Source of the DNA: Octopus sinensis
Lineage: Eukaryota
DNA: 64,000 nucleotides
Assembly (NCBI RefSeq): GCF_006345805.1
Contig: NC_043002.1
Coordinates: 70,866,001 to 70,930,000, forward strand
Reading direction: 5' to 3'
Under the pieces are notes generated by a model. That model ran no database searches, was not told the origin of the DNA, and was given only the letters and a program-made list of their open reading frames with translations. This document shows, one piece after another, positions 6,971 to 64,000 of this stretch. Each line of letters opens with the position of its first letter. Position 1 is the first letter of the stretch. The translations under genes and the position numbers were made by a program.

Positions 6971-8641
6971 TTTTTTTTCTTCTTCTTTCAAATTTGCTTC
7001 CATTTCTTGCCGAGCGTCTTCCCGACTCCTAGGGCAAAGAAACTCATAGTATACATTGGTAGGCCATTAAACCAAACTCAATAGTTCGTTCATTTTTTTT
7101 TCTTTTTTTTTAAGGTTAAATTAAAATACATGGGCAGTAACAGCTCTCACAGCGACAATGCTCTTCTCAATACGTGTGATGTACCAGTTAAGACAATCTT
7201 TTGCACTTCTTGCAGGGATGGTAAGCCAGGGATCATTCTCATATAATTTTCGGTTCCCTTCTTGATCATTCCTAGTGCTCCTACGATCACTGGTATTGTA
7301 ACCGCCTTGAGATGCCACATTTGCTCAATTTCAATGAGTAGGTCTTTATATTTTCTGAGCTTGTCAAACTCTTTCGCTGAGATATTATGATCACAGGGGA
7401 TGCTCATGTCGATCAATAAGCAAACTTTATTGTTTTTGTCTTTCACAACAATATCTGGTTTATTGGCTTTGATGGTTCGGTCTGTATGTACTGGAAAATC
7501 CCACAGAATCGTTACATTTTCTCCTTCAGTTACAGATTCAGGGTGGTGATTATACCACTTGTCGGCAGTTTTGATATTGTAATGCCGACTTATTAGCCAG
7601 TGTAGATATTGGCCAACTCTGTCATGTCTTAATTTATACTCCACTGGTGCTAAGACTTTACATCCAGAGATTAGGTGGTCCACTGTTTCAATCATGTCGT
7701 TGCAGAATCGGCATTTTGGGTCTGCTCCATTTTTCATTACATTGGCCTGGTAGTTCCGGGTTAATAGGCTTTGATCTTGAGCAGCCAGGATGAAACCTTC
7801 GCTCTCTGCTTTTAGCCCTGAGCTCCGTAGCCACTGATGGGTTTGCTTCTGGTCAACATCAGCTTGTTTGCTACGGGCCACATATTTGCCGTGCAGAGGT
7901 TTCTCCTCCCACCTATCAGCCAATTGCTCGTGCGCTTTTTTCGTTGCCATTATTTTCACCTTCTTTGCAACAATAGTTGCCGGGTTGTTCAGTTTGGGTA
8001 TCCTGTACGAGATCAATAGCAATTTTTTTGCTTTCCTTTATGATAGAATGAAGCTTTTTTCGCCTCTCGTGATTTTCCACGAGCTTTAGCATCCAGTGAT
8101 TCGTTATTTCAAGATATTTGGCCAGTCCAATTGTGATTGTTTTGTAAGCTAGATCAAATTGGATCAGGCCTCGACCTCCTTGAGCTCTGGGAAGGTAAAG
8201 GCGATCTACGTCTGCCTTTGGGTGGTGCATCCTATTACAACTCAGCAGCTTGCGTATTTTTCTATCTATATTCTTTACTTCACTCATATTCCAGTTCAAC
8301 ACATTGTAGCTATAAGTAACAACTGGAACTGCTAAGGAATTTATAGCTAACACCTTGTTACGTGCATTTAGTTCAGATTTCAGGACTGCACGAACTCTCC
8401 TATAACATTCCTTCCTGATCTTCTCTTTCATGCTTGCATGCTGAATACCAGAGCCTTCATTTATCCCTAAATATTAGTATGTTTGTTCTTGCTCAATCTC
8501 TCTTATGATTGTGCCAATATCTAACACGACTGAATTTGTGGTCTTCACTTTCCCTTTCTGGAAAGTGGCCTTGGCACACTTCTCAAGCCCAAACTCCATC
8601 CCGATGTCATCGCTGAATGCTTTCACAGTGCGCAATAGGCC
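6970..8641 (-). mobile_element. 5'-truncated R4/Dong-clade non-LTR retrotransposon, family A (late RT, thumb, CCHC, RLE, 3'UTR)
   Basis: Minus-strand translation gives FSDDIGMEFGLEKC..TY*YLG (late RT motifs), NKVLAINSLAVPVVTYS, RLYLPRAQGGRGL, KPLHGKY, CRFCx8Hx4C and KPDIVV..LLIDMSIP..KY (PD-(D/E)xK). It has one stop, a frameshift near 8020, and (TAA)n on both sides on the sense strand. Confidence 0.92.
7147..8640 (-). pseudogene. Disrupted C-terminal part of the R4/Dong RT-RLE ORF
   Basis: ORF-track segments 7916..8431 and 7147..8022 join through a frameshift; upstream RT homology continues to about 8640 with one in-frame TAA. Confidence 0.88.
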
Positions 8642-8700: not shown

Positions 8701-9707
8701 ACTTAGCCAATGTCGAATTTGCTTCCATCCCTACGGTGACGATGAAATACGTATAAGTTGAACACTGGCTAGAACACATCTGTGTAAATAGTATATACAC
8801 AAACACGTAGACACACATGCACACACACGCGCATATACACACATATACACAGAGAGATTTATATATAGTCTACTATGAGGTGGCTCTGCCCACCAGGGGG
8901 AAAGAGCGTGCGTACGAAACGAAATCGCATATATAAGCGATAGGTGCAATGACGCAACGTAAATCGGCCGAACAGGGGCTATCCACCATGTTTCGCCAAA
9001 CGACAACAAATCACATAATCCCAAGTCTGAAGCGTGCTTCCTAAAACTATCTTACTTCAACGAGAGAACCATTACATCAATCCAGCGTGTTATCTACTAG
9101 AAGGGACTTAATATACAGATAGTACACTTTTTCTAATTGCCACATTGACATCCTTAAAATTTACTCTTTGGACTACGTGGCACATGAAGTATTATGCAGG
9201 AAATGTGGTACGCCCTACTTTGAATCCACTACAAGAAAACTGCTGATTCACACCAGAGAATACGGCACATAGAACACCTGCAGAATTGTCAGATCCAGGA
9301 AATGGTCGTGTGCATGGGGAACATTTAATGTGATAGGGGCAGCTGTAAAATTAAGCATGCCCTTCTTCTTATTATGCTGAAGTTAGCCCTAAGCAATTGA
9401 AACCTTCTCCAGGCACAGAATGGCTGTTGTAATAACACCAGTCTACGTGAGTCTTTATCTGAGCATGACTTATTCCACTCCTCATTTTTCCACGTATCCC
9501 GAAAAAAAGATCATAGCGCCTAAATATTACAACACAAGGTAAAACTTCAACTAGTTTTACTTTTCTTTTTGTAGTTCACTGTTATCCAAAATGTTTTTTA
9601 TCCATCTATCTATCTTTATATGTATCTTTCTATCTATACATACATGCGTATGTACGTACGTACATATATACATACCTACATACATACATACAAAAATGTA
9701 TGTACGC

Positions 9708-10057
<350 letters not shown>

Positions 10058-10058
<1 letters not shown>

Positions 10059-10856
10059 ATTAATAAATTTTAGGGTAGCAAAAAATTCTAGAAAAATTCT
10101 CCGCTACCAGCGGTCAAGTTAGAGGAAAAGATAGTCAATAGACTATATAATATACATTCAAATATATAAGGAATGGCCATAATAGGACATTCGACTCACT
10201 AGAAAGAGCAGTTAAACTCCAAACCACTAATAGAGAAATAAAAACGTTCACCCTCTCCTTTCTGGACAATGCATAGTTTCAGCAATCTTTAGTAAATATA
10301 TTTAATTTATTTACAACTGGCGTGCCTCTTCAGCAGAAAACCAAGGACTACCATATCGTCACGAAGTGATAATAACCATGCGACGAGTCTATATGCTATA
10401 ACTTTTCAAAATCCACCACACTCGCGCGGTTTTCTCAGCAGCAAATATAAACTGCCGATTTAAATTCAAAATTAGCGAAAAAATCATTAATTATTAAATT
10501 TTAGGGTAGCAAAAAACTCTAGAAAAATTTTCCGCTACCAGCGGTCAAGTGAGAAAGAAAAGATATTCAATAGACTATATAATATACGTTCAAATATATA
10601 AGGAATGGCCATAATAGCATATAGAATCGTAGTATGGTTATTATCACTTCGTAGCATGGTTATATCACAGAAACACCTGTAAGATTTTGAATTTCTTCCT
10701 ATAGTAATATTGTCTATGACTTTAGATGTTTCCGCTGCATCGGAATTCTGTAAAGGCTCCATAACTATCGTCTTAGAGCCGCCCCTGTAATCCGTTACAG
10801 CACTCACCTAGCGTACCTAATCGTTTAGATCACCTGTGAACTAAACCCCCATAGTT

Positions 10857-10860: not shown

Positions 10861-10905
<45 letters not shown>

Positions 10906-10909
10906 CCTA

Positions 10910-11222
10910 GTCTAGTAGCCTGGTCCGTGACCGATCAGGCTATCAGATGTTGCTACACATCGCTGGTCACAAGGCGCTTTGCACTGTTTTAGCCTTCAAA
11001 TGTCGCCACCCCGCTGGCTAAGCGTACAGGCCAACAAAAGACAGACTGAGAGAAAGTTGTGGCGAAAGCGTACAGTAGGGATCGCCACCAGCCCCTGCCG
11101 GAGCCTCATGGAGCTTTTAGGTGTTTTCGTTCAATAAACACTCACAACGCCCGGTCTAGGAATCGAAACCGCGATCCTACAACCGCGCGTCCGCTGCCCT
11201 AACCACTGTGCCATTGCACTCC
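10910..11222 (-). mobile_element. tRNA-derived SINE (family S3)
   Basis: Minus strand: TGGCACAGTGGTTAGGG A-box and GGTTTCGATTCC B-box; head and body shared with 48925-49253. Confidence 0.8.
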
Positions 11223-11284
11223 CCACACATATATGTTTGTGTCTGTGTCTGTGTCTACATTCATAGATTTATCTTTTTTTTCTT

Positions 11285-11658: not shown

Positions 11659-13304
11659 ACTTCACATAGTCACGCCAGCGCCTCTTCACATAGCCATGCC
11701 CATCCTCGCAACTAGGACTTCCACACCGTTTGTTTTTACAAATTCACTCACAGCTTATCTGCTGATCTCAGGGCTCTTGTACAAGTGACGTGCCCAAGGT
11801 GATGCCGAGTACGACTGTACCGGAAACCATTTCGCTACGATGCGAGCTTGTATTGTAGCGTCATGTGCATAGTTTAATAAGGATATATTATATTCTTGAA
11901 AGAAAATAACTTCGTAAAGTAATATATTAGATGAATCATCATATTTGTGGATTTAATAGTGAATGTAAAGATAAAAAATTAAAGAACATAAGTTGAATCT
12001 CATGTTATGATGTAGGCAATAAGCCAAAAAAAAAAAAAAAGAAAACAAAAGTAAAAGAAACGTATCTCAAACCAATATACGAGCTAGGGATAAAATGAAA
12101 TCAGTTTCAAAATCAGTAAAAACGTAGTTCAATAACTAAAGCCGGTAAATATACAAAGTAAGCAAAAGTATATATTTGCGGTTTGTTCGAGTCTCATCGT
12201 AAATCACTATATTTACTTTCGTTCGTCTCCCAAACTAATGCCATTTGTGACGATCGATGGTATTTTCGTATATTTACTTTAAAAAACGTACATGCTTGTA
12301 AAAACAGCCATCATGTATAATCACATACATGAGTATATGAATGTATATTGAAATCTTGTAGTAAAATAATAGCGTACCACGCTTACAATATCTGAATCAT
12401 TCGAAAAAAGTGAATAGGCTAAATTTGACTTTTTATGGTAGAACGCAGCTGTATTAGTAACAATGTTTAGTGAACCATTTGTTCAAAAAATCAAGTCATA
12501 CAGTTTAAACTAGAATTTTTCAGCGATCAATAAAACTAAACTGCTAAAATCAATATTTATCACAAGATTCATAAAATAGTCGGTTTTAAATCAATCCTTA
12601 TTTTGAATAGTTCAATTGAAAAGCCAAGTTCATTTACAGATATTTTCTAGCAGTGACGAATACGTTATTGAAAATAGCTAGATATTTAAAGAATGATTTT
12701 AAAGAATAGCTTGTTTTTGACATAGTGACCGATGATAACCACAAACATTGCCCTTTGCCACCTGCAATGTTTTGTAAAGGAAAAGTATCTGAATACGGTC
12801 GTTCCACTTGCTAGAGAGAGCAGCCAAACTGACCTAAAATTACACACTTCTCTTGTTAAACTATGCCACTCAGGACTGATTTAGAAATAAAATGAAAGCT
12901 GGGATGCGGCCATAAGTCGGCACACCCAGGACGGCCTGACACAAAGGAACATACGAGCACATGTAAGATGATACTAATATCGTTAAAAGCATATGAGGCA
13001 ATGTAGCTTTAGGAATGAGTGGAGAATTTCATAAATATGGCTTGCTTAAAAAGAAAAAAAACAAAAGTAAAACGGCATCCAATTGCAGTTCCTTGTGTGC
13101 TCTGTTATAATACTATTATGTTACTCGTGTTATAATTTGAAATTAGCCAATGGTATATGACTAAGTAAATGAGCCTTCAGCACAATTGTGAAACACAGCA
13201 GCAGTAAAGAAACGATGAAAAATGTGGAAAATACCTGTAATTTCTGATGATTCTATGTTTTCCTCATGATTCCTATATTCTTAGAAACCTTATGTATATG
13301 GTAT

Positions 13305-13452
13305 ATACTCAATTAACACTTATTCTACCGATAGCCGAAAAGATGAAAAGCAAAGTCGACCTCGGAGCCATTTGAACTCAGAACGTATAGACGGATGAAA
13401 TGCCGCTAAGCATTTCGCCCGGCGTGCTGACGATTCTACCAGCTCACCGCTG
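13305..13452 (-). mobile_element. SINE family S2 copy
   Basis: Contains the CAAAGTCGACCTCGG..ATTTGAACTCAGAACGTA..GAAATGCCGCTAAGCATTTCGCCCGGCGTGCT signature repeated more than 12 times in the window. Confidence 0.8.
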
Positions 13453-13894
13453 TAGAAAATTAAAAATATTACGACTAAAATATTATTTTTCTTGAATATT
13501 GGTCTGTGCAGCAGCTTGGTAACTATCTTCTATTGTAATGCCGTTCGGATTAACGTAGACCCGTGTTATATATATACATACAGATATTTGGGAATGTGTC
13601 TATGTGTGCATGATTGTTTATTTGAGTTTGGGTTTGTCGCCCCCACAATTTGACAATAGGTTCTGGTGTGTTTACACCAGTGTAACATATCGGTGCAAAT
13701 AAAAAAAAAACTCGATAAAAGAGACCCTTATAATAAGTACAGACATCTAAGAAAGTACTGACGTTGAATTGCTCAACTAAAATATTCAAACCGATCCAAT
13801 GAGGGAAGCAAGTAAAACCTAAAAGTCACTATGTGCAAGTCACAACAATCTGTGTTTTCCTAAAAGATGTTTTCACAGAAAATCTGAAAAATGT

Positions 13895-14487
13895 TGGTTT
13901 CGAATTCGAGCACAAGGCCAGCGATTTCGCAGAAGTGGATAAGTCAATTACGTCGACAGCTGTAAAGAATTTGGTACTTTTTTTACTGACAGCTGAAATG
14001 CAAAGTCGTCCTCGGCGGCAATTGAACTAAGAATTTAAACACGGACGAAATGCAGCTTAGCTTTGCCCGGTGTCACAGCGATTCTTTTCTGCTCTAGCTA
14101 GGCACAAGGCCCTAAATTTTAGGGTAGAGGGCCAGTCGATTAGATCGCGCCCAGTACACAACTGGTACTTAATTTATCGACCCCGAAAGGATGAAAGACA
14201 AAGTCGACCTCGACGGAATTTGAACTCAGAACGTAAAGACAGACGAAATACCTATTTCTTTACTACCCACAATGGGCTACACACAGAGGAGACAAACAAG
14301 GACAGACAAACGGATTAAGTTGATTACATCGACCCCAGTGCGTAACCGGTACTTATTTAATCGACCCCGAAAGGATGAAATGCAAAGTCGACCTCGGCGG
14401 AATTTGAACTCAGAACGTAGCGACAGACGAAATACTGCTAAGCATTTTGCCCGGCGTGCTAAAGTTCCTGCCAGCTGGCCGCCGTAG
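13895..14487 (-). mobile_element. Cluster of three S2 SINE copies, including a dimer at 14095-14487
   Basis: Repeated S2 core; dimer junction GAAATACC|TATTTCTTTACTACCCACAATGGGCTA. Confidence 0.8.
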
Positions 14488-14680
14488 CAAATTTGAAATA
14501 TTAGGACTAAAATATTGTTTTTCATGATATATTTGTCTGTTTTTTCGTTTCTTTTTTTTTTGCGATCAACTTGTTATGAATTCCTAGGATGTAACTATTT
14601 CTAGTGAATCAACACAACGCATAGTACCAGCATATTTCCCTCTAATTCGGAACAAAAATTTAAGGACTTTATCTCCGTAT

Positions 14681-24593: not shown

Positions 24594-25428
24594 GCACTAA
24601 ACTAAACGCAAAAGAAATAGACAAAGAAAAATCCCAGCAATGGTTGAGAAGCTCAGGACTCAAAGCAGAAAACAGAGGAATTTTTAATTGCAGCACAAGA
24701 CCAAAGCCTCCCCACCAGAAATTACCAAAAACATGTAATGAAAAGAAATATTACAAGTAACTGCAGAATATGTGGAGATGGACAAGAAACAATAAATCAT
24801 ATTATCTCTAGCTGCCCAGTCCTGGCTAAGAAGGAATATATTCACAGACATGACAGAGTTGGAACCTACATACATTGGAAGCTATGCCAACATTATGGAA
24901 TAACAACAGAAAAAAGATGGTATAGGCACACACCAGAAAAGGTCACAGAAAACGAGAAAGCAACCATACTCTGGATATGCCGATACACACAGATAGAGAA
25001 ATTAAGGCCAACAGACCAGATATAGTTGTCAGAGATCATGAAGAAAAGAAATGCCTTCTAATTGATGTATCAATACCGGCAGATGACAACGTGTCTCTAA
25101 AAGAAATGGAGAAACTCTCAAAATACAAAGACCTGGAAATAGAGATAACTAGAATGTGGAACCTGAAAACAGAAACAATTCCTATCATAGTAGGTGCATT
25201 AGGCATGATAAAAAACTATTCAGACAAATACATAACAAAAACACCAGGACTTACAAACACATATAACATACAGAAAATTGCACTACTAGGCACTGCACAC
25301 ATCCTACGCAGAACACTTTCCATACAATAACCATCAGAGCATCACAACAAATCACAGCACATACCCAAGGCACACAGAGCTGCGCTCGGTAGTGAAGTGA
25401 AAGCACGCTATAAAAATAAAACTACTGA
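24588..25428 (+). mobile_element. 5'-truncated R4/Dong-clade LINE, family B, copy 1
   Basis: WLRSSGLKAE..AAQDQSL, CRICx8Hx4C, RPDIVV..LIDVSIP..KY, then stop and a ~100 bp 3'UTR ending ACTACTG(AAT)n; -1 frameshift near 24976; (TAA)n on both sides. Confidence 0.92.
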
Positions 25429-25979
25429 ATAATAATAATAATAATAATAATAATGATAACAATCACTCACCTGTTATTGGATTGCTGATTATATAACTGA
25501 CTCTAAGTAATAATTACCGCCAGCCCCTTTGTGTATCATAATTAAACCATCCCCACCGTATATTGTTCTTAGATATACCGAAAAAATGATATGCCCTAGA
25601 ACACTATCGGATTAATCAACGTTTGCTTCAATGCTCATCTGTGTTAAAAAGACACATTTATTCATGAATTCTGAAGAAATATTTCAATCAATGTTTTCTA
25701 GCTTGTTTCATTTTCAAAAGGAATAATTTACGTGGTCTTTAAAGTCAAGTAATTCTTGAACGTTCTACTCATTATATGCATGGAATATTACGTGTATCAT
25801 TTTACGAATGTTTCAACACTTCAGTGATTAAATGAAAAATCCCAAATGTTGAATAGAAAACAATGTTTTAAGCCTGTACAACATACTTTTCCTTTCTTGT
25901 TCTTACGCATACATACCTATACAGACATGTCTATGTACATATGAACAAGCATATGTACACGCACGCACACACGCATTAC

Positions 25980-35432: not shown

Positions 35433-35720
35433 TACATATATACCTACCATGATAACCTGGCGCGAAATTGAAGAACTATTAATATATTTATCAAGTCAAT
35501 GCAGCGTACATGACTTAAATATTTTACATAACTCATTAATAAACTAAAAAATGAAACAAAAGGCATGATTCATATATACACAATACGTTGATATAATGCT
35601 TTCCGAAATAACAGATTGTAATTTTTCGTGTTTGTGTCATATTAACAAATTACATTTTAAACACGAATAGAAACATTGCTATGGAAACATAAAAGTACAA
35701 TACACAAATTTGCACTTTTA

Positions 35721-36643
35721 TTTCGAAAAATTAAAAGGCGTCTTATATACGAGGGATGTTGAAACGTTCTTAGCTTTAAGGACATCACGAAAGGCTTGGT
35801 TGAAAGCCCAACCAACAGATTTCTTAGGGAAAATGATGAAGGACTGCTGCAATTTCGAAAAATTAAAAGGCGTCTTATATACGAGGGATGTTGAAACGTT
35901 CTTAGCTTTAAGGACATCACGAAAGGCTTGGTTGAAAGCCCAACCAACAGATTTCTTAGGGAAAATGATGAAGGACTGCTGCAATTTCGAAAAATTAAAA
36001 GGCGTCTTATATACGAGGGATGTTGAAACGTTCTTAGCTTTAAGGACATCACGAAAGGCTTGGTTGAAAGCCCAACCAACAGATTTCTTAGGGAAAATGA
36101 TGAAGGACTGCTGCAATTTCGAAAAATTAAAAGGCGTCTTATATACGAGGGATGTTGAAACGTTCTTAGCTTTAAGGACATCACGAAAAGCTTTGTTGAA
36201 AGCCCAACCAACAGATTTCTTAGGGAAAATGATGAAGGACTGCTGCAATTTCGAAAAATTAAAAGGCGTCTATATACGAGGGATGTTGAAACGTTCTTAG
36301 CTTTAAGGACATCACGATAGGCTTGGTTGAAAGCCCAACCAACAGATTTCTTAGGGAAAATGATGAAGGACTGCTGCAATTTCGAAAAATTAAAAGGCGT
36401 CTTATATACGAGGGATGTTGAAACGTTCTTAGCTTTAAGGACATCACGAAAAGCTTGGTTGAAAGCCCAACCAACAGATTTCTTAGGGAAAATGATGAAG
36501 GACTGCTGCAATTTCGAAAAATTAAAAGGCGTCTTATATACGAGGGATGTTGAAACGTTCTTAGCTTTAAGGACATCACGAAAGGCTTGGTTGAAAGCCC
36601 AACCAACAGATTTCTTAGGAAAAATGATGAAGGACTGCTGCAA
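35721..36643 (+). repeat. Tandem array, 7 x 132 bp (one unit 131 bp)
   Basis: Unit starts at 35721, 35853, 35985, 36117, 36249, 36380 and 36512; near-identical units; unit 5 has a 1-bp deletion. Confidence 0.95.
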
Positions 36644-36744
36644 TAATTGTGTGAATCTGTGAGGGGAATATGTTGCATAAAATCATAATTAACTGAACCT
36701 CCTAGAGGTTCTTTCACCAAAGCCAGGAACTTTTCAGGACCCGC
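36541..36744 (+). mobile_element. Mariner-derived MITE (~200 bp) with transposase C-terminal remnant
   Basis: TA|CGAGGGATGTTGAAACGTTCTTAGCTTT ... AAAGCCAGGAACTTTTCAGGACCCGC|TA form imperfect TIRs; the interior reads KAWLKAQPTDF..NCVNL*GEYVA*, like the mariner W..QP..FY..KCV...G.YVE end. Confidence 0.7.
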
Positions 36745-39157: not shown

Positions 39158-39775
39158 TCTAGGCACAAGGCCTGAAATTTGGGGAGAGGAGGCCAGTCGA
39201 TTCTATCGACCTCAGTACGCAGCTCGTACATGACCCCGAAGGAATTAAAGGCAAAGTCGACCTCGGCGGAATTTGAACTCAGAACATGAAGACAGACGAA
39301 ATACCTATTTCTTTACTACCCACAATGGGCTAAACACAGAGGGGACAAACAAGGACAGACAAACGGATTGAGTCGATTACATCGACCTCAGTGAGTAAAT
39401 GGTACTTAATTTATCGACCCCTAAAGGATGAAAAGCAAAGTCGACCTCGGCGGAATTTGAACTTAGAACTTAACGGCAGACGAAATACGGCTACGCATTT
39501 CGCCCGGCGTGCTAACGTTTCTTCCAACTCGCCGCCTTTTCAAAGTGACCTTCATGAATAATAATCCTTTTTACTAAAGGTACAAGGCCTGGAATGAGGA
39601 AGGGACTAGTCGATTACATCGACCCCAGTGTTTCACTGGTCCTTAATTTATCGACCACCAAATAATGAAAGGCGAAGTCGACCTCAGCTGAATTTGAACT
39701 GAGAACGTAGCGACAGGCGAAATACTGCTAATCATTTCGACTAGCATGCAAACGTTTCTGCCATCTCTCTGCTTT
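39158..39775 (-). mobile_element. S2 SINE dimer (39158-39538) plus a third S2 copy
   Basis: Same dimer junction as 14095-14487. Confidence 0.8.
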
Positions 39776-39959
39776 TACTCGTATCTATAATAAACGTATT
39801 TAGAAAATATTTGCACCTAATGTGTGCGAACCGGTAATCATTGATGGCTAAATTGTCCTCTTATATTTGCATTGTGACTTCTCAAATATTTTGAATGTCC
39901 ATTGAATAGCATTAAATGATAAATATGATATTTTTTGTGCCATTATGTAAATCAGTTGA

Positions 39960-40863: not shown

Positions 40864-42034
40864 TCAAGACATCCCATAAGTTCTGTCCGATTTTACCTTT
40901 TTAAAAATGGAATTTTAGAATGTCTAATGGAATTAAAGGTTATTTTTATGTATTTGTGTACATTTAAGCTAATTAATTATTATCTTGCAGAAAAATAGAA
41001 TTAAAATTTCTTTGATTGAAACCCTTTCTAACATGGGAGTATCGAAAGAGCATTTAAGGCACATAATGCTTAATGAGTAGAAGAAAATAAAAAAGAAACT
41101 CTGCTGCCGAAGCGACTCGAAATATGCACTCAGAAAGAATGCTTGAACGAAAGAACTCGCAGGAGATGGTTTGCAAAATTCAGGATTGGAGATTTCAGCC
41201 TTGAAGATGAAGATCGAACATGATGTCCAGTTGAGGCATTACTTGAGGCATTACTTGAAGAAAATCCTGCATTATCAGTTGAAGAATTAGCAATAAAGCT
41301 TAGTTCATCCCATACAACTGTTCATCGTCATCTTCAACAACTTGGAAAGGTTTCTAAAATTAGAAAATGGCGCCTCATGAATTGTCCGAAAGCAACCGAA
41401 AATTCCGAGTCTGTTCTTCTCTCCATTCTCGCGAACTCATTTCACCCTTCTTGGATAGACTTGTGACTGGTGACGAAAAATGGATCAATCGAAATGTTAA
41501 GCGTCGTAAACAGTGACTTGGTAAACAGAAAAAGGCTCAACCACAACCGAGAAGGGAACTTCATGGGAAAAATGCTTCTCTCTATCTAGTGGAATTGCAA
41601 ATGAGTAATTCACTTTCAATTGTTACCACCTAATGCAACAAGCAATGCTCAAGTCTACTGTCAGCAATTAGAGCGTTTGAATCAAGCTTTTCAACAGGAC
41701 AATGCGTGACGCCACACTGCAAAGATCACATCACATCCACCTTATTTTTCCGACCTTGCTCCTTCAGACTACCATTTGTTTCGTAGTTTACAGAATCACT
41801 TGGAAAAAATAAATTTCGCAAGCTAGGAGGAGGTCGAAACTGACATTTCAGAGTCCTTCGGTTTGAAACCAAAAGAGTTTTACATTGATGGAATTAAAAA
41901 GCTTGTAAATAGATGGATTGGAAGTCATAGATAGCCGGTGAAAGTACACTGATGATTAAATTTCAATTAAATATAACATTTGATCACTTGTTTTCTTTTT
42001 TCAAAATTCTGACAGAACTTGTGAGATGACCTGA
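40864..42034 (+). mobile_element. Decayed mariner (DD34D) transposon
   Basis: TA|TCAAGACATCCCATAAGTTCTGTCCGA ... TCTGACAGAACTTGTGAGATGACCTGA|TA TIRs; remnants of W.PHEL, LVTGDEKWI, QQDNA and HPPYxPDLAPSDYHLFRSLQNHL; many stops and frameshifts. Confidence 0.9.
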
Positions 42035-43113: not shown

Positions 43114-45044
43114 ACAAAGCTGGTGCCACAGCATGATCGCAGCTTTGAAGCAATAACATTTAAATATGTGTGTACGTGTGTGTGTGAGTGTGTATACCTG
43201 TTTTTTTTTTTTTTATAAATGGTTTACGCGAGTCTATTTTCCATCACTTACCTATTCCGTACAATCTAATATTTATCCCTGAAGTGCTGATGAATTCAAT
43301 TAATATGAAACTCTGAAAGAAAGATTTGGTCTCTTTGCACCGCCTGGCATGGGGATAAAAGTTCTAGGAACAGAACGTTCTCTGGGGGAATTTCTTTCGT
43401 GTTGCAGAGATTAATTTTTCTATCCATTCATTCTGTTGATTTCTGTCGGTCCCTCAAAATAATTCATGATGCATAAGAGTATTTTTTGAGCAATTTTGTA
43501 GAAAAATCCATCTAACCGTCCATTTTCTTCGACCATTATTCCTGGTAATGTCATCAGGCACCTCCTTTACTGTGTCGTGCTCGTGTCAGAATCAATCGTC
43601 ATTACATTTTCCGTCTAGATTCCCAGTCATGACCCATTGATGAACAAGAAGTGCATCTACGCGCGAATACACTGACTTCACTGAGACTGAGATCACAGGT
43701 ACGATAAAACGCTCAAATGTGGCAAGGACGTAAGGGAGCGTGAAAATCGGTGTAAGAGCTTAAAAGCTTTACATAAAGGAAATTTTCTCTCACATATCTG
43801 TGTTGCCAGGTTTCGTGGATCTCCGGATCGACAACAAAGAAATAGCAATCCCAGTTTTTATTTTTAAATGAGAGACAATACAGAGTGCTCTTCTTTGTTG
43901 AATTTTCTCAGTAAAGTCTACGCTAGGAGTCTAAACAACAGATGTAGGGAAATTTCGGAGCCTAAGGTATGTGAAAATGTGTGTGCTCTCTGTTCTAGAC
44001 AAAGATATATCTCTAACCCTGTTTATAATTTATTCAGTGAAGTACTTACTTCTCTTATTAAATTGAAAACGTTCATCTTTACAAAACTTTTCATGGGAAC
44101 CTTCTACCGTAAAATTACTACGTTGTCTTGGGCAAGAGTTTCAGAAAATGTTAGTGTAAAAGTGATGTAGGTAACATATTGTTAATGTGCGTTTATTAGA
44201 CATGTCGATTTTACAAACCCTGGGGAAATTTTGCTGAAACTTTAATGCTTATTTCTCTAAACGAACAAGGTCCATTGATCTTCCTCATTAGAATTATAAA
44301 GCATGATTATTTTGTGAATGATATGTCTCGTTGGTTTTCGAACTAAACTCTAGTACATTTACCTCAGATGCTTGTGAACATTTTGTCGAAATATTTGATT
44401 AATCACCCTTTACCATATCATCTTCTCAAATAATTTATAGCAGAATAACTAATGAATTTGAAATTTAAATGAATGTCCTCATGCAATGGTTTCTGTCACA
44501 AGTGATCTCCCTAACTTTCTTATAATCTAAACAGCACTGCATAATTAATCTGTTGTCTACTATGTGATATTTTCTAGTAGTTTTCTTAGAAAGAAAACTA
44601 ATTTTGACTTATTCAATTATTCGCAGCTAATTCAATATAAATATCATATTCTGTAATAATATCCTGCATTATTAATAACCTGCTGTAACAGTAAAATTCT
44701 ATTCAAATATGTTTCATAATAAGTTTTAATTATTTCACAGTAGACGTTCTTCATTTATAAATCTCATCGCTTTTAGAAACATGTTGGCTTTTGTCATTGT
44801 ATTCATATTAATATTAATATGAAAACACACACGCACATACACACACACAAACACACACTCACACATAGCAGTAATGAATAAATAATCTTTGTTATCATAA
44901 CTTATGAGATGCTGATGGATGATAATTCTATTCATCATCTGTTCCAAATAATTAGAATATTAACAATGAATAAATCTGAATCTAGTTAAAATAAACTTCT
45001 TGTCACAATTGTTTAGCTATAGGGATACGATTCCTTTGTATTAT

Positions 45045-45225
45045 AGGCACAGCTCTGAAATTGGGCGCAGAGGCCAGTCTATTATATCGACTACAGAGCT
45101 TGATGGGTACACATTTCATCGACTCAGAAAGGATTAAAGGCAAAATCCATCTCGATGGAATTTGATCTCTGAACTTAGAGACTAACGAAATGATGCTTAG
45201 CATGTTTTCCGGCGTGCCCGCTGCC
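45045..45225 (-). mobile_element. Diverged S2 SINE
   Basis: Degenerate S2 core and tail. Confidence 0.6.
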
Positions 45226-45395
45226 TTAAAGCATTGTAATAATTCTTTATTAGCCACGAAAAAACCTAGTTCAAAATAAATACAAAGGACATTATTTTTT
45301 ACACAGATAAGTGTAAACAATAGAAAAACAATGACACATTCTAACTAACAAACTTCCCAATAAATGAAAGCGGCACCCAGGGGCAATCATCTTAC

Positions 45396-48924: not shown

Positions 48925-49253
48925 AGGACCTGCTCGTGAAATTAATGTGCAAGTGGCTGAGCACTCGACAGACACGTGTAACCGTAACGTAGTTCTCATG
49001 GAGATTCAGCGTGACACAGAGTGGGATAAGGCTGGCCGTTTGAAATACAAGTACAAAAGAAACAGGGACAAAGAGTGATAGAAAGTTGTGATGAAGGTGT
49101 ATAGCAGGATTCGCCACAATTCCCTGACGGAGACTCGTGGAGCTTTAGATGTTTTAGCTCAATAAACACTCACAACGCCCGACCTGGGAATCGGAACAGC
49201 GATCCTACGACCGCGAGTCCGCTGCCCTAACCACTGTGCCATTGCGTCTCCAC
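48925..49253 (-). mobile_element. tRNA-derived SINE (S3 head, different 3' part from the 10910 copy)
   Basis: Head and body match 11040-11222; the distal ~130 bp is unrelated to that copy. Confidence 0.75.
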
Positions 49254-49904
49254 ATATGCACATATACATATATATCAATGTATGTAGTTGTGTTTTTGGG
49301 AATCTGCATCAGTGGCATCAAAGGATAGCTTATCATTAGACTATTTCTTTCTCTTATAAATAGTCATTGTTTTGCCTAAATTTGAAACCATTGGCATTTT
49401 ATGGGTCGTGGGTTAGTTCATAGATCGACACCGGTCTCAGTGAGAACCTGGGCGTCGACGATTTGCAGCTGCTCGCTTGCAGATGCGTACCATTTTGTTG
49501 CCAATGCCAGGAGACCTTGTGTGATATGATAACTCAAGGGTGTTAATGAAATTGAAGAAATGTGACCACTATTTGTTGAAATATGAACGAATGGGACAAG
49601 AATGGTATCATTGAATGGCCGGGTCTGCTCTGTGGATTCGCTTGTAGATTGAGGGAAGCGGATAGGGAGAGAGACTTCCTTGGTTAAACGTTTGACAGCG
49701 GTTATCTGGACTTCCACGAGCAGACCTTGAATGTATCCACAATTTTTCTTGTTTCATTTTTTTGTTTGTTTCTATGTGATACCTTTACTATTTACACACC
49801 TTCGTAAAATTCCCCACATTATATTGTATTCTATCGTCCCATGTCTTTCTTGATCTACTATCGAACCTTTAGGGTAATAAAGAAATCATTATTATTATTG
49901 TTGT

Positions 49905-50335: not shown

Positions 50336-51124
50336 ATTATTATTGTTGATGGTGATGTTGCTGGCGGGAGTAATTTCAATGGGAGCGGTGGTTGTAGGGG
50401 TGATAAGCTCTAACAGCGCGTACTCGTAACGATTTCATAATGTATATTTTCTTGAAACTAAAATTCCAATTTTATAACATTCTATCTCTGAAGTAGGATC
50501 TTTAATATCGCCTACCACATTTATGGAAGGCATAATAAACTGTCCACTCAGAACTCACAAGTTTCAGTGCATCTAAACTCAAGATACTTTGAATATATTC
50601 CTTTTGATATTTGTGTTGTTATGCATAAAATCAATTTGAATACGAGCAGAGTTGTTCGTATGGAGAATTGAGTTCAAGTATTCATTATCATTCTGACAAA
50701 GTTTAATAACAAGAATAATAGAAAATCGCTGACTTTTTCTCATGGGTTCATCACTCCAGAAAATTGCTTGCTATATTGCAAGGGATATTAAACCATTAAT
50801 GATCCATCCAATTCCAGGATCCATCAAGAAGTGCACAGATTGATGAATTCACATAGATAATACGCCAGCTGTTCCTCGCGGAAATCTTTCAATTATTGAA
50901 TGAAACTAAATCGAGATAATTACTTACTTCCCATGTAGAAATAAAAGCGACAGTATTCAGAATATATTTACATGATTGATAATAAAACTTCCCATTTTAT
51001 CAAGCCCTGAAATACGTAATTCAGATCATATATTTTAATAAACGGTAAGGTATGTTCCTCTGTTATTATTAAAGCGAAGTGCATTGTTATTACTATTATT
51101 ATTACTATTATTATTATTATTATT

Positions 51125-52235
51125 CAGTAGTTTTATTTTTATAACGTGCTTTCACTTCACTACCGAGCGCAGCTCTGTGTGCCTTGGGTATGTGTTGCGA
51201 TTTGTTGTGATGCTCTGATGGTTATTGTATGGAAAGTGTTCTGCGTAGGATGTGTGCAGTGCCTAGTTGTGCAATTTTCTGTATGTTATATGTGTTTGTA
51301 AGTCCTGGTGTTTTTGTAATGTATTTGTCTGAATATTTTTTATCATGCCTAATGCACCTACTATGATAGGGATTGTTTCTGTTTTCAGATTCCACATTCT
51401 GGTTACCTCTATTTCCAGGTCTTTGTATTTTGAGAGTTTCTCCATTTCTTTTAGAGACACGTTGTCATCTGCCAGTATTGATACATCAATTAGAAAGCAT
51501 TTTTTTCTTCATGATCTCTGACAACTATATCTGGTCTGTTGGCCTTAATTTCTCTATCTGTGTGTATCGGCATATCCCAGAGTATGCTTGCTTTCTCGTT
51601 TTCTGTGACCTTTTCTGGTGTGTGCCTATACCATCTTTTTTCTGTTGTTATTCCATAATGTTGGCATAGCTTCCAATGTATGTAGGTTCCAACTTTGTCA
51701 TGTCTGTGAATATATTCCTTCTTAGCCAGGACTGGGCAGCTAGAGATAATATGATTTATTGTTTCTTGTCCATCTCCACATATTCTGCAGTTACTTGTTA
51801 TATTTCTTTTCATTACATGTTTTTGGTAATTTCTGGTGGGGAGGCTTTGGTCTTGTGCTGCAATTAAAAATTCCTCTGTTTCTGCTTTGAGTCCTGAGCT
51901 TCTCAACCATTGCTGGGATTTTTCTTTGTCTATTTCTTTTGCATTTAGTTTAGTCCAGTATTTACCATGAAGGGGCTTTTCTTGCCATCGTTTTATCATG
52001 GTTCGTTGCTGTTCTATTTTTAGTTTGGATTTCATTTGTTTTATAGCTTTTGTTGTTTCTTCATCATCTTCTTCTTCTTCTTCATATTTATTAGGTGGTA
52101 TGATTTCTTGTTTGTATTTGTGAGCTTCCTTAAATACTGAGAACAGCTTTTTGTTTTGCTCGCGTTTTGCCGCTATTTGTATCAGTTTTCCTTCCTTCTG
52201 AAGTAGATATTTTTGCAGTCCTATGGTGGTTAATT
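51125..52235 (-). mobile_element. 5'-truncated R4/Dong-clade LINE, family B, copy 2
   Basis: TTIGLQKYL..KPLHGKYW..CCHC..RPDIVV; frameshifts in poly-A runs; 3'UTR nearly identical to 25331-25428; flanked by (TTA)n. Confidence 0.92.
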
Positions 52236-52243
52236 TATAGTAG

Positions 52244-52321
<78 letters not shown>

Positions 52322-52344
52322 CCTCCTCCTCCTCATCATCATCA

Positions 52345-52407
<63 letters not shown>

Positions 52408-52412
<5 letters not shown>

Positions 52413-52813
52413 TAGTTTTATTTTTATAGCGTGCTTTCACTTCACTACCGAGCGCAGCTCTGTGTGCCTTGGGTATATGCTGTGATTTGTTGTGATGCTC
52501 TGTTGGTTATTGTATGGAAAGTGTTCTGCGTAGGATGTGTGCAGTGCCTAGTAGTGCAATTTTCTGTATGTTATATGTGTTTGTAAGTCCTGGTGTTTTT
52601 GTTATGTATTTGTCTGAATATTTTTTTATCATGCCTAATGCACCTAATATGATAGGAATTATTTCTGTTTTCAGGTTCCACATTCTAGTTACCTCTATTT
52701 CCAGGTCTTTGTATTTTGAGAGTTTCTCCATTTCTTTTAGAGACACGTTGTCATCTGCCGGTATTGATACATCAATTAGAAAGCATTTTTTTTCTTCATG
52801 ATCTCTGACAACT
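52408..52813 (-). mobile_element. 5'-truncated R4/Dong-clade LINE, family B, copy 3
   Basis: IVVRDHEEKKCFLIDVSIP..RRTLSIQ* plus 3'UTR; (TTA)n on both sides. Confidence 0.92.
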
Positions 52814-52869
52814 ATTATTATTATTATTATTATTATTATCCTCCTCGTCCTCATCATCATCATCATTAA

Positions 52870-53318: not shown

Positions 53319-53870
53319 TGAGTGAGAGAGCAGTGCATGCTATCAAAGTGTCACGGTTAAAATATACGAAGCTCAGTATACCCATCATGACTACACGTCT
53401 GATAAGGGTATACCAGGCACATGCATCACAATCATATGTGCGCGACATGGTGATCTCATATCCAAATAAACAGCGCATGACCTTGCAGGTGGGGCCCAGT
53501 TAGAATTTTCTTCTTATCGCGTAGCCCATCCCACTCAAAAGGTCCTTGAATAAGAATGGTTTAGGGATGTTGAACGAAACACCCATGATTCCAGATCTAA
53601 TTTATTCAAACCCCAAAGAATACCTCTCAACACATGGCTATGATGCTCCCCCACTACTTCTGGTTGTGATCAGAGACGCACATATCGTTAGCCACCAAGG
53701 GACATGCTCAACTGGTTATGGTCAAACAACTGAGAAGCAAATCTATGGTGTTGAGCAGAATATTGGCTTTAGCCCATCTTTTACACCAAGACAAAACAAT
53801 GTACGTAACACTTTCAATCAGTTAAGATCAGAAGCAATGAGAGAAACTGTCTGCTACTTCATCAGGGCAT
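53319..53870. mobile_element. ~550 bp non-coding insertion flanked by TTA-type microsatellites (probable non-autonomous element)
   Basis: Higher-GC block with sharp junctions into (TTA/TTG)n and (TTA)n; no recognisable ORF. Confidence 0.45.
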
Positions 53871-56826: not shown

Positions 56827-57186
56827 CATTTTACTATCTACTTATCTCTCTCTATCTATCTTTCTCTATGTTTATATCTATCTTTCTCTCACCCTCTCAC
56901 TTCTATTCTAGCCTCTCTACTTACTCATTTTCTCGCTCTCACTCTTATACTCCCAGCCTTCATCCCCTTCCCTGTTTTTCTCTGTCGCTTCCTCTCCATG
57001 CTGTCTTTCTCCTCTGCTTGCTGTTGTCACGTAACCAGCAGCCAGTTTATATTTTTCTTCATTCTTAGACTGGTCCCTTAGCTGACCAATCGTACTGTCT
57101 CTCCAATCTTCAACACTCAACATATTTTTTTAGCGTTACGCACTATTCTCGACTCCTTAGTCGCAAAGTCGTGTTTTGTTAGATTA

Positions 57187-58321
<1,135 letters not shown>

Positions 58322-62827: not shown

Positions 62828-63523
62828 GTGGCGGGTTGGTAGACTCGTTACCGCGCCAACCGAAAGTCTTAGCGGCATTTCGTGCATCTCTACGTTCTGA
62901 GTTCAAATTCCACCGAAGTTGACTTTGCCTTTCATAATTTCACGCTTGATAAAATAATTACCAGCTAAGCACTGGGATCGATGTCATCGACTTTCTCACC
63001 GAAACCGCTGAACTTGTGCCAAAATTTGAAGTTAATGTCTCTATCTAACGGCTTGTAAAGGATTTATATTTTCAATTATCAAGTCATTGGTGCAGAGTAT
63101 GCGAATAATTCTTTCTACTGCAGACACAAGGTTTTAAATTTCGAGGAGTGGGTTAGTGAATTATATTGACCTGGTACCTAATTTATAGAACCCCAAAGGA
63201 TAAAATGCAAGGTCGACTTTGTTGGAAATTGAACTTAGAACGTGATAACGGAAGAAATGCCGCTAAGCACTTTGCCCGGCAAGCAAACTATTCCTATTTC
63301 TTTATTTCCTACAAGGGGCTAAACATAGAGCGGACAAACAAGGACAGACAAATGTATTAATTAGATTACATCGACCCAGTGCGTAATTGGCACTTAATTT
63401 ATCGACCCCGAAAGCATGAAAGGCAAAGTCGACCTCGGCGGAATTTGAACTCAGAACGTAGCGGCAGAAGAAATACCGCTAAGCATTTGGCCCGGCGTAC
63501 TAACGATTCTGCCAGCTCACCGC
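62828..63523. mobile_element. S2 SINE (plus, 62828-63030) and two joined S2 copies (minus, 63120-63523)
   Basis: S2 signatures; the junction differs from the 14.2 and 39.3 kb dimers. Confidence 0.78.
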
Positions 63524-64000
63524 AAACTATTCTGCCAGTTCGTTGCCTTAGGGTAACTGCATATTAATAGGTTAGTCACAACTGGAAAAGAATACATATA
63601 ACCATAGATGTATTTAATTATTGATCACATTTGGCTTAACAAATACTTATAACAAAATTGCCATTAGTTGATAATTATTATCCGTTTACTATTATGATTT
63701 TCGTGCAGGGAACTAGGAAGAAAACAGGAATATTCGTAGCTGCCATGCTTCTGAGTTCAAGTATGTTTCATCGAGATTAATAGCAACAAATTTCGAGAAT
63801 GTTGTTTTAAAGGACGCTCAGATAATTCTAATATATATCTGACGTCATGACTAAATGTTCAAGAGAATGAACTGCGTAATATAAAGTATAATAAAGTTAG
63901 CCACCAGTCATAAATAACTATGATCCAGAAACTTGTTCTATGCTTTCCCTAATTTTTATTAGGCTCGTCTGTTGTTGCAAATATGAGTGCATGATGCTTT

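What the first reader, a model, noticed from the sequence alone, without database searches (positions are those of the whole stretch)
10259..10339. Fully canonical type I hammerhead ribozyme hidden on the minus strand
Seen: stem I TTTCTG/CAGAAA (6 bp), CTGAAGA, stem II GGCA/TGCT enclosing a 38-nt insert with its own 7-bp hairpin, GAAAC, an 8-nt loop containing palindromic ATGCAT, then GTC. All invariant core positions and the GUC triplet are intact, with predicted cleavage between 10265 and 10264. Known: Penelope-like elements and retrozymes carry type I hammerheads, often with short or palindromic stem III that can cleave as dimers. Inference: this is a potentially active self-cleaving RNA in a non-coding mobile element.
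Basis: partly seen in the sequence, partly recalled or inferred. Interest (0 to 1): 0.88.

Follow-up and report, generated by a model that had tools for sequence, protein, structure and literature searches.

The report
Lone atypical hammerhead-like RNA motif
The minus strand really does spell out every conserved letter of a type I hammerhead self-cleaving RNA, but the motif is atypical, fits no curated hammerhead model, has no second copy, and could not be compared with relatives, so it is about as likely to be a decayed retroelement ribozyme as a chance look-alike.

Summary
The motif is in the sequence as described. On the minus strand, 10340->10258, there is a 7-bp helix I, CUGAAGA, a 4-bp helix II, GAAA, a 2-bp helix III with loop UAUGCAUU, and GUC with cleavage predicted between 10265 and 10264.

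It is not "fully canonical":
- The conserved G10.1-C11.1 pair is a G.U wobble.
- Helix II is interrupted by a 38-nt insert.
- No Rfam family matches, even at E<=10 in a 99-nt search.
- The hammerhead fold is not the preferred fold (-7.2 versus -10.8 kcal/mol; z +0.41).

A match of this quality is expected about 0.0004-0.0014 times per 64-kb window, from both Markov simulations and permuted-core decoys. That is rare for one window but means tens of matches per gigabase-sized genome.

The context gives some support. The motif lies in a 432-nt AT-rich unit present as about 1.3 head-to-tail copies, next to an inverted fragment and abutting (TA)n. A 16-bp hairpin in the repeat forms only on the same strand.

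There is no second hammerhead, no Penelope-like ORF and no other copy in the window. The source genome is not in any searchable collection, so conservation and covariation are untested.

Verdict: hammerhead-derived relic or weak variant about 0.45; chance about 0.40. Interest is modest.

The parts
10334..10340 (-). Helix I, 5' strand (UUUUCUG)
   Evidence: Pairs with 10264-10258 as 6 Watson-Crick pairs plus U10340.G10258. Pair probabilities are 0.8-0.96 for the inner six pairs.
10343..10347 (-). Possible closing stem beyond a 2x2 internal loop (GG/GA), 5' strand (UCCUU)
   Evidence: RNAduplex of 10352-10334 with 10264-10246 gives 7 bp + 2x2 loop + 5 bp at -11.5 kcal/mol. This fits a type I layout, with helix I carrying an internal 'loop 1', but it is weak evidence.
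10327..10333 (-). Core C3-A9: CUGAAGA
   Evidence: Read directly and matched by the descriptor.
10323..10326 (-). Helix II, 5' strand (GGCA; G10326 = G10.1)
   Evidence: Pairs with UGCU at 10284-10281. The pair nearest the core is G.U. Pair probability in the ensemble is only about 0.05.
10285..10322 (-). 38-nt insert capping helix II; 7-bp AU-rich hairpin 10314-10308 / 10298-10292 with a 9-nt loop
   Evidence: Read directly. The inner hairpin has pair probability about 0.92. It is joined to helix II by an 8x7-nt internal loop that is not a lightly decayed helix.
10281..10284 (-). Helix II, 3' strand (UGCU; U10281 = position 11.1)
   Evidence: U11.1 followed by G12 would be what a CpG-to-TpG transition leaves from an ancestral C11.1 (inference).
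10276..10280 (-). G12 A13 A14 A15.1 C15.2 (GAAAC)
10268..10275 (-). Loop 3, UAUGCAUU, with the palindrome AUGCAU
   Evidence: Two copies of ACUAUGCAUUGU can form a 10-bp duplex with two U.U mismatches at -6.7 kcal/mol.
10265..10267 (-). G16.2 U16.1 C17 (GUC); cleavage predicted 3' of C10265
   Evidence: Helix III (A-U, C-G) has pair probability about 0.01 in the monomer.
10258..10264 (-). Helix I, 3' strand (CAGAAAG)
10251..10255 (-). Possible closing stem, 3' strand (GAGGG)
10486..10617 (-). Direct repeat copy a (132 nt), upstream of the motif on the minus strand
   Evidence: 94% identical to 10055-10185. The covariance model scores it 163.9 bits.
10055..10185 (-). Direct repeat copy b (131 nt), downstream of the motif, abutting (TA)n
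   Evidence: With copy a it delimits a 432-nt unit (10617->10186, GC 34%) present about 1.3 times.
10074..10108 (-). 16-bp hairpin in repeat copy b (the same hairpin occurs in copy a at about 10505-10539)
   Evidence: On the minus strand the energies are -17.1 and -17.0 kcal/mol, z -5.0 and -3.7, with 0 of 200 shuffles as good. On the plus strand z is -1.2 and -1.9. The two substitutions between the copies keep pairing: G.U to A-U, and U-A to U.G.
10361..10399 (.). Inverted repeat arm inside the unit, 20 nt upstream of the motif
   Evidence: 92% complementary to 10614-10652.
10614..10652 (.). Inverted repeat arm directly upstream of repeat copy a; overlaps a 22-bp tandem duplication at 10627-10668
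9715..10056 (.). (TA)n / (TATG)n microsatellite flanking the 3' end of the unit
   Evidence: Tandem Repeats Finder.
10861..10904 (.). (TA)22 on the other side of the 806-bp block
   Evidence: It may instead be the tail of the SINE-like element at about 10912-11232.

Best explanation
The motif is most likely a relic, or at best a weakly active variant, of a type I hammerhead ribozyme. It would have arrived in an old, non-coding, RNA-derived insertion whose sense strand is the minus strand.

The carrier is a roughly 432-nt AT-rich unit present as about 1.3 head-to-tail copies, with an inverted fragment at its upstream end and (TA)n at its downstream end. Penelope-like elements and animal non-LTR retrozymes leave this kind of arrangement.

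In the parent element, tandem copies would be transcribed. Two hammerheads would pair through their palindromic loop 3 to build a long helix III, and each would cut after GUC, releasing unit-length RNA.

This copy carries only one hammerhead. It has a G.U where G10.1-C11.1 is normally conserved, and its helix II is marginally stable. I expect little or no self-cleavage from this locus today.

Shown: the sequence motif, its rarity within a single window, the repeat architecture, and the strand-specific hairpin. Inferred: the retroelement origin, the CpG-decay explanation for U11.1, dimer-mode cleavage, and present inactivity.
For: Motif and rarity:
- The core is complete and the type I topology is correct.
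- Chance expectation is about 0.0004-0.0014 per window, from two independent nulls.
- C15.2-G16.2 and C17 are the usual natural choices (my knowledge). From the window's composition they would occur together in only about 1.5% of chance matches.

Hammerhead-like architecture:
- The helix sizes match the published description of canonical metazoan type I hammerheads (PMC4209133). Helix I has 6 Watson-Crick pairs, followed by a possible internal loop and closing stem. Helix II has 4 bp. Helix III has 2 bp with a palindromic loop, which gives a 10-bp intermolecular helix at -6.7 kcal/mol.

Context:
- The motif lies inside a 432-nt unit at 34% GC that is bounded by 94%-identical direct repeats. 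Animal retrozyme units are 150-450 bp with GC below 45% (PMC7229834).
- Short-range direct-repeat structures cover only about 5-10% of the window.
- An inverted fragment sits at the upstream end and (TA)n flanks the block. PLE insertions are described with partial tandems, adjacent inverted copies and a (TA)n bias (PMC8557442).
- The RNA of the unit is more structured than shuffles on the minus strand (z -3.7) than on the plus strand (z -1.8).
- The 16-bp G.U-containing hairpin in the repeat exists only on the minus strand. It survives two substitutions between the copies.
Against: - No Rfam hammerhead family matches at the gathering score, at E<=10 in 601 nt, or at E<=10 in 99 nt.
- The 81-nt RNA folds no better than shuffles (z +0.41).
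- The hammerhead fold is 3.6 kcal/mol above the minimum free energy. Helix II has pair probability about 0.05 and helix III about 0.01.
- The G10.1-C11.1 pair, described as highly conserved even in PLE variants (PMC4209133), is G.U here.
- A 38-nt, three-part helix II with an 8x7 internal loop is unlike described animal hammerheads. It leaves no loop 1-loop 2 contact.
- Only one motif exists in 64 kb.
- The direct repeats do not include the hammerhead.
- No RT or GIY-YIG remnant lies nearby. Only zf-RVT LINE fragments were found.
- No other copy of the unit was found in the window or in any collection.
- At genome scale, tens of chance matches of this quality are expected.
Confidence: 0.45

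Rival explanations
1. Chance constellation. An AT-rich, repeat-laden eukaryotic sequence happens to contain CUGANGA and GAAA 46 nt apart, with short complementary flanks. The local direct and inverted repeats are ordinary segmental duplication, MITE-like debris, or two 5'-truncated copies of some other retroelement. None of this has anything to do with a ribozyme.
For: - The descriptor has to allow a 38-nt gap in helix II to fit. Under chance, long gaps are the rule; in real hammerheads they are the exception.
- Decoy cores in the same window reach helix I >=6 bp with helix II >=4 bp 7 times in 5039 descriptors. Two of those 7 decoy hits also carry a 6-nt palindrome in loop 3.
- Extrapolated to a Gb-sized genome, this gives tens of equal-quality matches.
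- There is no Rfam hit and no thermodynamic signal for the 81-mer.
- G.U at 10.1/11.1 is commoner under chance than in real hammerheads.
- The motif is single-copy, and no relatives were found.
- The 39-bp inverted repeats 214 bp apart could be the ends of a MITE.
Against: - The per-window expectation is only about 0.001.
- The extra canonical choices C15.2-G16.2 and C17 multiply that by about 0.015. The location inside a retrozyme-sized partial tandem multiplies it by about 0.05-0.1. Both factors are and are inference.
- The motif is on the same strand as the strand-specific hairpin and the stronger RNA structure.
Confidence: 0.4
2. This is a currently active self-cleaving hammerhead. Transcripts of the minus strand would cut themselves after C10265, probably as intermolecular dimers through the AUGCAU loop. 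The long helix II arm would replace the usual loop 2.
For: - All catalytic core positions are intact.
- G.U at 10.1/11.1 still pairs.
- The dimer helix III is feasible at -6.7 kcal/mol.
- PLE-type minimal hammerheads with weak or absent helix III do cleave, though poorly and as dimers or trimers (PMC4209133).
Against: - No tandem partner exists in cis, so dimerisation would need two transcripts to meet.
- Helix II is only 4 bp including a wobble, and is closed by a 15-nt internal loop. Its pair probability is about 0.05.
- No tertiary loop-loop contact is possible in the canonical manner.
- There is no Rfam match.
- Even validated PLE mini-hammerheads showed low activity, mostly at non-physiological Mg2+ (PMC4209133).
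Confidence: 0.15

Closest known systems
Canonical metazoan type I hammerhead ribozymes (Rfam Hammerhead_1, RF00163; Schistosoma satellite and newt satellite 2 types)
   Same: - Core CUGANGA...GAAA...GUC with helix I open.
- Helix I of about 6 bp and helix II of 4 bp.
- Helix III of 1-2 bp capped by a palindromic loop that permits dimeric cleavage (PMC4209133, PMC7229834).
   Different: - Loop 3 is 8 nt rather than 2-4 nt.
- Helix II is capped by a 38-nt imperfect arm instead of a small loop 2, so the loop 1-loop 2 contact is missing.
- G10.1-C11.1 is G.U.
- The Rfam model does not match.
- The motif is not in a tandem array.
Minimal or atypical hammerheads in the pseudo-LTRs of Penelope-like elements
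   Same: - Weak or no helix III, with palindromic 15.2-16.2/loop 3.
- Low expected activity.
- Host elements form partial tandems with adjacent inverted copies and favour microsatellite targets (PMC4209133, PMC8557442).
   Different: - PLE mini-hammerheads have a long continuous helix II (6-8 bp), a bulged nucleotide before 10.1, a short helix I (4-5 bp), and a conserved G10.1-C11.1.
- Here helix II is 4 bp plus an insert, with no bulge, and helix I is 7 bp.
- No RT/GIY-YIG ORF lies near the motif.
- The direct repeat does not contain the motif.
Animal non-LTR retrozymes (tandem 150-450-bp AT-rich repeats with one type I hammerhead per unit, expressed as circRNAs)
   Same: - Unit size 432 nt, GC 34%, non-coding.
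- One type I motif per unit.
- Head-to-tail redundancy (1.3 copies).
- The sense-strand RNA is more structured than shuffles.
   Different: - Only 1.3 units with a single hammerhead, so no unit-length RNA can be excised from this locus.
- No multi-copy family was demonstrated.
- The predicted structure is a string of local hairpins, not a rod.
'HHR_half_core' cases in the 3' UTRs of Naiad PLEs (core halves 35-50 nt apart), reported in PMC8557442
   Same: - The two core halves here are 46 nt apart.
- Naiads prefer (TA)n targets and, in cephalopods, survive only as old remnants.
   Different: This is a lead only. The authors themselves did not regard those cores as canonical hammerheads.

Membership tests
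Type I hammerhead ribozyme | Conserved core nucleotides C3 U4 G5 A6 N7 G8 A9, G12 A13 A14, the A15.1-U16.1 pair, and H17 (not G) | tested here: met
   CUGAAGA 10333-10327; GAA 10280-10278; A10277-U10266; C10265.
Type I hammerhead ribozyme | Three helices around the core, with helix I open and helices II and III closed | tested here: met
   Helix I is 7 bp, helix II 4 bp and helix III 2 bp by the descriptor. However, helices II and III have ensemble pair probabilities of about 0.05 and 0.01.
Type I hammerhead ribozyme | G10.1-C11.1 pair closing helix II at the core (highly conserved, PMC4209133) | tested here: not met
   The pair G10326.U10281 is a wobble.
Type I hammerhead ribozyme | Match to the curated covariance models (Rfam Hammerhead_1 and related families) | tested here: not met
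   No hit at the gathering score in the window. None at E<=10 in 10000-10600 or in 10250-10348. The 38-nt insert probably accounts for much of the loss, so this is not a refutation.
Type I hammerhead ribozyme | Loop 1-loop 2 tertiary contact (canonical animal type I) | tested here: inconclusive
   A 2x2 internal loop in helix I is possible. There is no compact loop 2, because helix II continues into a 38-nt arm.
Type I hammerhead ribozyme | Conservation of the core, and compensatory changes in the helices, among related copies | not testable with these tools
   No related copy is in the window. None was found in the protein or contig collections or in metagenome contigs. The source genome is not held.
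Type I hammerhead ribozyme | Mg2+-dependent self-cleavage 3' of H17 | not testable with these tools
   This needs an in-vitro transcription assay or mapping of RNA ends.
Animal non-LTR retrozyme | Tandem array (at least a dimer) of 150-450-bp units, each with a type I hammerhead | tested here: not met
   There are 1.3 copies of a 432-nt unit. Only one hammerhead motif is present, and the repeated part lacks it.
Animal non-LTR retrozyme | Low GC (below 45%), non-coding | tested here: met
   GC is 34%. Only short ORFs are present, with no homologues or domains.
Animal non-LTR retrozyme | Multi-copy family expressed as circular RNA | not testable with these tools
   No genome or transcriptome of the source organism is available.
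Penelope-like element (autonomous) | ORF with a telomerase-like RT and a GIY-YIG endonuclease | tested here: not met
   Pfam on stop-free segments in 8.4-14.3 kb gave nothing. On other ORFs across the window it gave only zf-RVT on the LINE fragments. These segments were not a complete six-frame scan.
Penelope-like element (autonomous) | Pseudo-LTRs from partial tandem insertion, often with an adjacent inverted copy; hammerhead inside the pLTR | tested here: inconclusive
   A partial tandem and an adjacent inverted 39-bp fragment are present. However, the hammerhead lies between the direct repeats, not within them.

The most novel reading that the evidence does not exclude
The 432-nt unit may be a member of an undescribed retrozyme or PLE-derived family in an invertebrate genome of mollusc or cephalopod type. 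Its hammerhead would carry a long, three-part helix II arm in place of loop 2 and would work through loop-3-mediated dimers. That would make it a structurally new sub-type that the current Rfam models and descriptors miss.
Probability: 0.15. Interest if true: 0.5.

Novelty: new member of a known kind. Interest (0 to 1): 0.25.

Why it matters
If real, it would add one more animal lineage and one more element family to the already long list of retroelement-borne type I hammerheads. It would also show that covariance-model screens miss variants with large insertions in helix II. That would be useful to ribozyme cataloguers but would change no concept. If it is chance, it is a useful calibration point. 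A complete hammerhead core with 6-7-bp and 4-bp helices turns up about once per thousand 64-kb windows of such AT-rich DNA when long loops are allowed. Motif completeness alone therefore should not be scored as high interest.

Tried and rejected
- **Rfam.** I searched at the gathering score on the whole window, then at E<=10 on 601 nt and on 99 nt. No hammerhead or any other family covers the motif.
- **Thermodynamics.** The monomer gives no signal.
- **Further copies in the window.** I used blastn, short-word blastn, nhmmer and a covariance model of the direct repeat. Only the two known repeat copies were found.
- **Copies elsewhere.** Exact look-ups of two window ORFs found nothing on record. 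A homology search with the 90-aa ORF overlapping the element found nothing. A 19-mer scan of metagenome contigs gave two hits. The one I could inspect is 61% GC and matches over 20 nt only, so it is a chance match. The other lies on a 338-kb contig that was not available to the script, so I did not inspect it; I assume it is also chance.
- **Organism identification.** I searched with the LINE ORF. Relatives at 50-72% identity occur in many marine invertebrates. The single 96% hit is on a 2-kb contig from an ENA metagenome. The organism therefore remains unidentified by tool. My guess of a cephalopod-like mollusc rests on the SINE-like element and the microsatellite load, and is unverified.
- **Other relaxed descriptor hits.** The hits at 53783-53870 (-) and 43283-43338 (+) are unrelated in sequence and of chance quality.
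- **Inverted second hammerhead.** I checked by eye, on the sequence, whether the inverted fragment upstream extends into an inverted second hammerhead. It does not.
- **Decayed continuous helix II.** I checked by manual pairing on the sequence whether the 38-nt insert is a lightly decayed continuous helix II. It is not.
- **PLE consensus sequences.** The supplementary sequences of the PLE papers are not held as text, so I could make no comparison with Naiad or Penelope consensus sequences.
- **Six-frame Pfam scan.** I scanned stop-free segments instead.

Full report
**What is there**

Read on the minus strand, 10340->10258 is UUUUCUG-CUGAAGA-GGCA-[38 nt]-UGCU-GAAAC-UAUGCAUU-GUC-CAGAAAG. My own descriptor scan for type I hammerheads finds it. 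The descriptor requires helix I, CUGANGA, helix II, GAAA, helix III beginning with A15.1-U16.1, then H17. The scan gives these dimensions:

| Feature | Size |
|---|---|
| Helix I | 7 bp (6 Watson-Crick + one G.U) |
| Helix II | 4 bp |
| Helix II cap | 38 nt |
| Helix III | 2 bp |
| Loop 3 | 8 nt |

The adjective "fully canonical" is not accurate. The helix II pair next to the core is G10326.U10281, a wobble. A G-C pair at this position is described as highly conserved, even in the aberrant Penelope-type variants (PMC4209133). Helix II is only four pairs long. It then opens into an 8x7-nt internal loop that leads to a 7-bp AU hairpin.

**Is it more than chance?**

I used two nulls.
- First-order Markov sequences with the window's composition, 1200 windows. 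They gave 0.014 hits per window at helix I >=4 bp and helix II >=3 bp, 1 hit in 1200 at I>=5/II>=4, and none at I>=6/II>=4.
- Decoy descriptors run on the real window, with the six fixed core letters permuted and the GAAA block rotated (5039 decoys). This keeps the real repeat and hairpin content. They gave 0.0091 hits per descriptor at I>=4/II>=3, 0.0014 at I>=6/II>=4, and 0.0004 at I>=7/II>=4.

The two nulls agree. A match this good is expected roughly once per 700-2500 windows. For this window alone that is significant. For a genome of a few gigabases it means tens of equally good accidents.

Several features were not part of the descriptor, and they move the balance further.
- C15.2-G16.2 and C17 are the usual natural choices (my knowledge). 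From the window's composition they are jointly expected in about 1.5% of chance matches. This favours a real origin.
- The G.U at 10.1/11.1 favours chance.
- The 38-nt gap also favours chance. Chance matches spread evenly over the allowed loop lengths, whereas real animal hammerheads have small loop 2 sequences.

**Independent tests of the motif**

- No Rfam family matches the motif. This holds at the gathering score, at E<=10 in a 601-nt search, and at E<=10 in a 99-nt search, where the filters are most permissive. The long insert probably costs the model many bits. I therefore read this as absence of support rather than refutation.
- The 81-mer folds no better than dinucleotide shuffles (-9.9 kcal/mol, z +0.41).
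- For the 83-mer (10340->10258), the hammerhead fold evaluates to -7.2 kcal/mol against a minimum free energy of -10.8. Pair probabilities are about 0.05 for helix II and 0.01 for helix III. Weak monomer folding is typical of animal type I hammerheads that work as dimers, so this is not decisive either.
- Two copies of ACUAUGCAUUGU can form a 10-bp helix III with two U.U mismatches (-6.7 kcal/mol).
- Helix I can continue through a 2x2 internal loop into a 5-bp closing stem. That is the layout of canonical type I motifs.

**Context**

The window is eukaryotic. It is 27-42% GC, crowded with microsatellites, and contains LINE fragments and SINE-like repeats. The motif lies in an 806-bp block between a (TA)22 run (10861-10904) and a large (TA)n/(TATG)n array (9636-10056). 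Within the block:
- A 132-nt segment occurs twice in direct orientation at 94% identity, at 10617->10486 and 10185->10055. This delimits a 432-nt unit of 34% GC that is present about 1.3 times.
- The hammerhead motif lies between the two copies, not inside them.
- Directly upstream of the first copy is a 39-bp inverted copy of an internal segment, 10614-10652 against 10361-10399.
- The repeat contains a 16-bp hairpin with several G.U pairs. It forms only in the minus-strand RNA: -17.1 and -17.0 kcal/mol, z -5.0 and -3.7, with 0 of 200 shuffles as good. On the plus strand z is -1.2 and -1.9. Both substitutions that distinguish the two copies within the stem preserve pairing.
- The whole unit is also more structured than shuffles on the minus strand (z -3.7) than on the plus strand (z -1.8).

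Partial head-to-tail copies, an adjacent inverted fragment, a (TA)n target and a sense strand shared with the hammerhead all fit the literature. Penelope-like elements are described this way (PMC8557442). So are the 150-450-bp AT-rich non-LTR retrozymes, which are now argued to be PLE derivatives (PMC7229834; bioRxiv 10.64898/2026.07.22.740005). Non-microsatellite short-range direct repeats cover only about 5-10% of the window. The co-location is therefore mildly informative.

**What is missing**

- There is no second hammerhead anywhere in the 64 kb, even with relaxed stems. This locus cannot release a unit-length RNA and cannot form a cis dimer.
- No RT or GIY-YIG remnant lies nearby. The only retroelement domains are zf-RVT on LINE fragments.
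- No further copy of the unit or of its repeat is in the window.
- Every route to relatives failed.
- The LINE ORF finds only 50-72% relatives across marine invertebrates, plus one 96% hit on a metagenome contig. The source genome is evidently not in the collections.
- The decisive test is conservation of the core and covariation in copies across the genome. It could not be run.

For orientation only: one cephalopod genome paper reports 235 Rfam Hammerhead_1 hits (PMC6962438), and Octopus vulgaris has active Penelope families (PMC13282606). My assignment of this window to such an organism is a guess.

**Weighing**

I estimate the expected number per genome of chance matches with all the observed properties. 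I compare it with the expected number of real but atypical hammerheads with the same properties. The two numbers come out within a factor of a few of each other, and the uncertainty is dominated by how often real families carry long helix II insertions. I therefore give these estimates:

| Reading | Estimate |
|---|---|
| Hammerhead-derived relic or weak variant in an old retrozyme/PLE-like insertion | about 0.45 |
| Pure chance | about 0.40 |

U11.1 followed by G12 is what CpG decay of the canonical C11.1 would leave. The 6% divergence of the two repeat copies suggests that the insertion is old. Both points are inference.

**Comparison and novelty**

If real, it works like the dimer-dependent type I hammerheads of animal satellites, retrozymes and PLEs. 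Membership in the curated family fails on two tested features: the G10.1-C11.1 pair and the Rfam model. It passes on core and topology, and it is untestable on covariation and cleavage. It is not a retrozyme array, and it is not an autonomous PLE.

The kind is well known. At best this is a new member with an unusual helix II.

Noticed in passing
window 35595-36685: A tandem satellite with a 132-bp period, at least 7-8 copies, mostly 94-100% identical. Long stop-free frames run through it on both strands. It contains no hammerhead core.
   Followed up: partly
window 24670-25466 versus 51086-52815: Inverted copies, 96-99% identical and about 26 kb apart, of the same LINE family (zf-RVT C-terminal domain). 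This suggests recent activity of that LINE. A third, more diverged fragment lies at 7147-8473 (-).
   Followed up: partly
window about 10912-11232 (-) and 49072-49254 (-): A SINE-like repeat, about 84% identical between the copies. Its head has box A/box B-like motifs (TGGTTAGGGC, GGTTTCGATTCC). ARAGORN does not call it a tRNA. The first copy ends in (TA)22 right next to the block that holds the hammerhead-like motif.
   Followed up: partly
window 13286-14540, 39371-39776, 45076-45244, 63143-63527: A family of roughly 170-bp repeats with 8 copies at 61-86% identity, often as adjacent pairs. It was not classified.
   Followed up: no
window 57183-57870 and 57470-58321: Near-identical (99.7-100%) direct repeats with 400-bp and 731-bp spacing, indicating a very recent local duplication or tandem element.
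   Followed up: no
window 41224-41463 (+): An 80-aa stop-free segment with helix-turn-helix matches (HTH_IclR, HTH_11 and others). It looks like the N-terminal DNA-binding part of a mariner/Tc1-type transposase remnant; that interpretation is from my own knowledge.
   Followed up: no
L003 (ENA metagenome contig, sample ERZ22666216): The only near-identical (96%) relative of the window's LINE ORF sits on a 2-kb contig of an environmental or sewage-type metagenome. DNA of the source organism, or a close relative, is apparently present there. None of the annotated genomes whose proteins the search returned held a close relative.
   Followed up: partly
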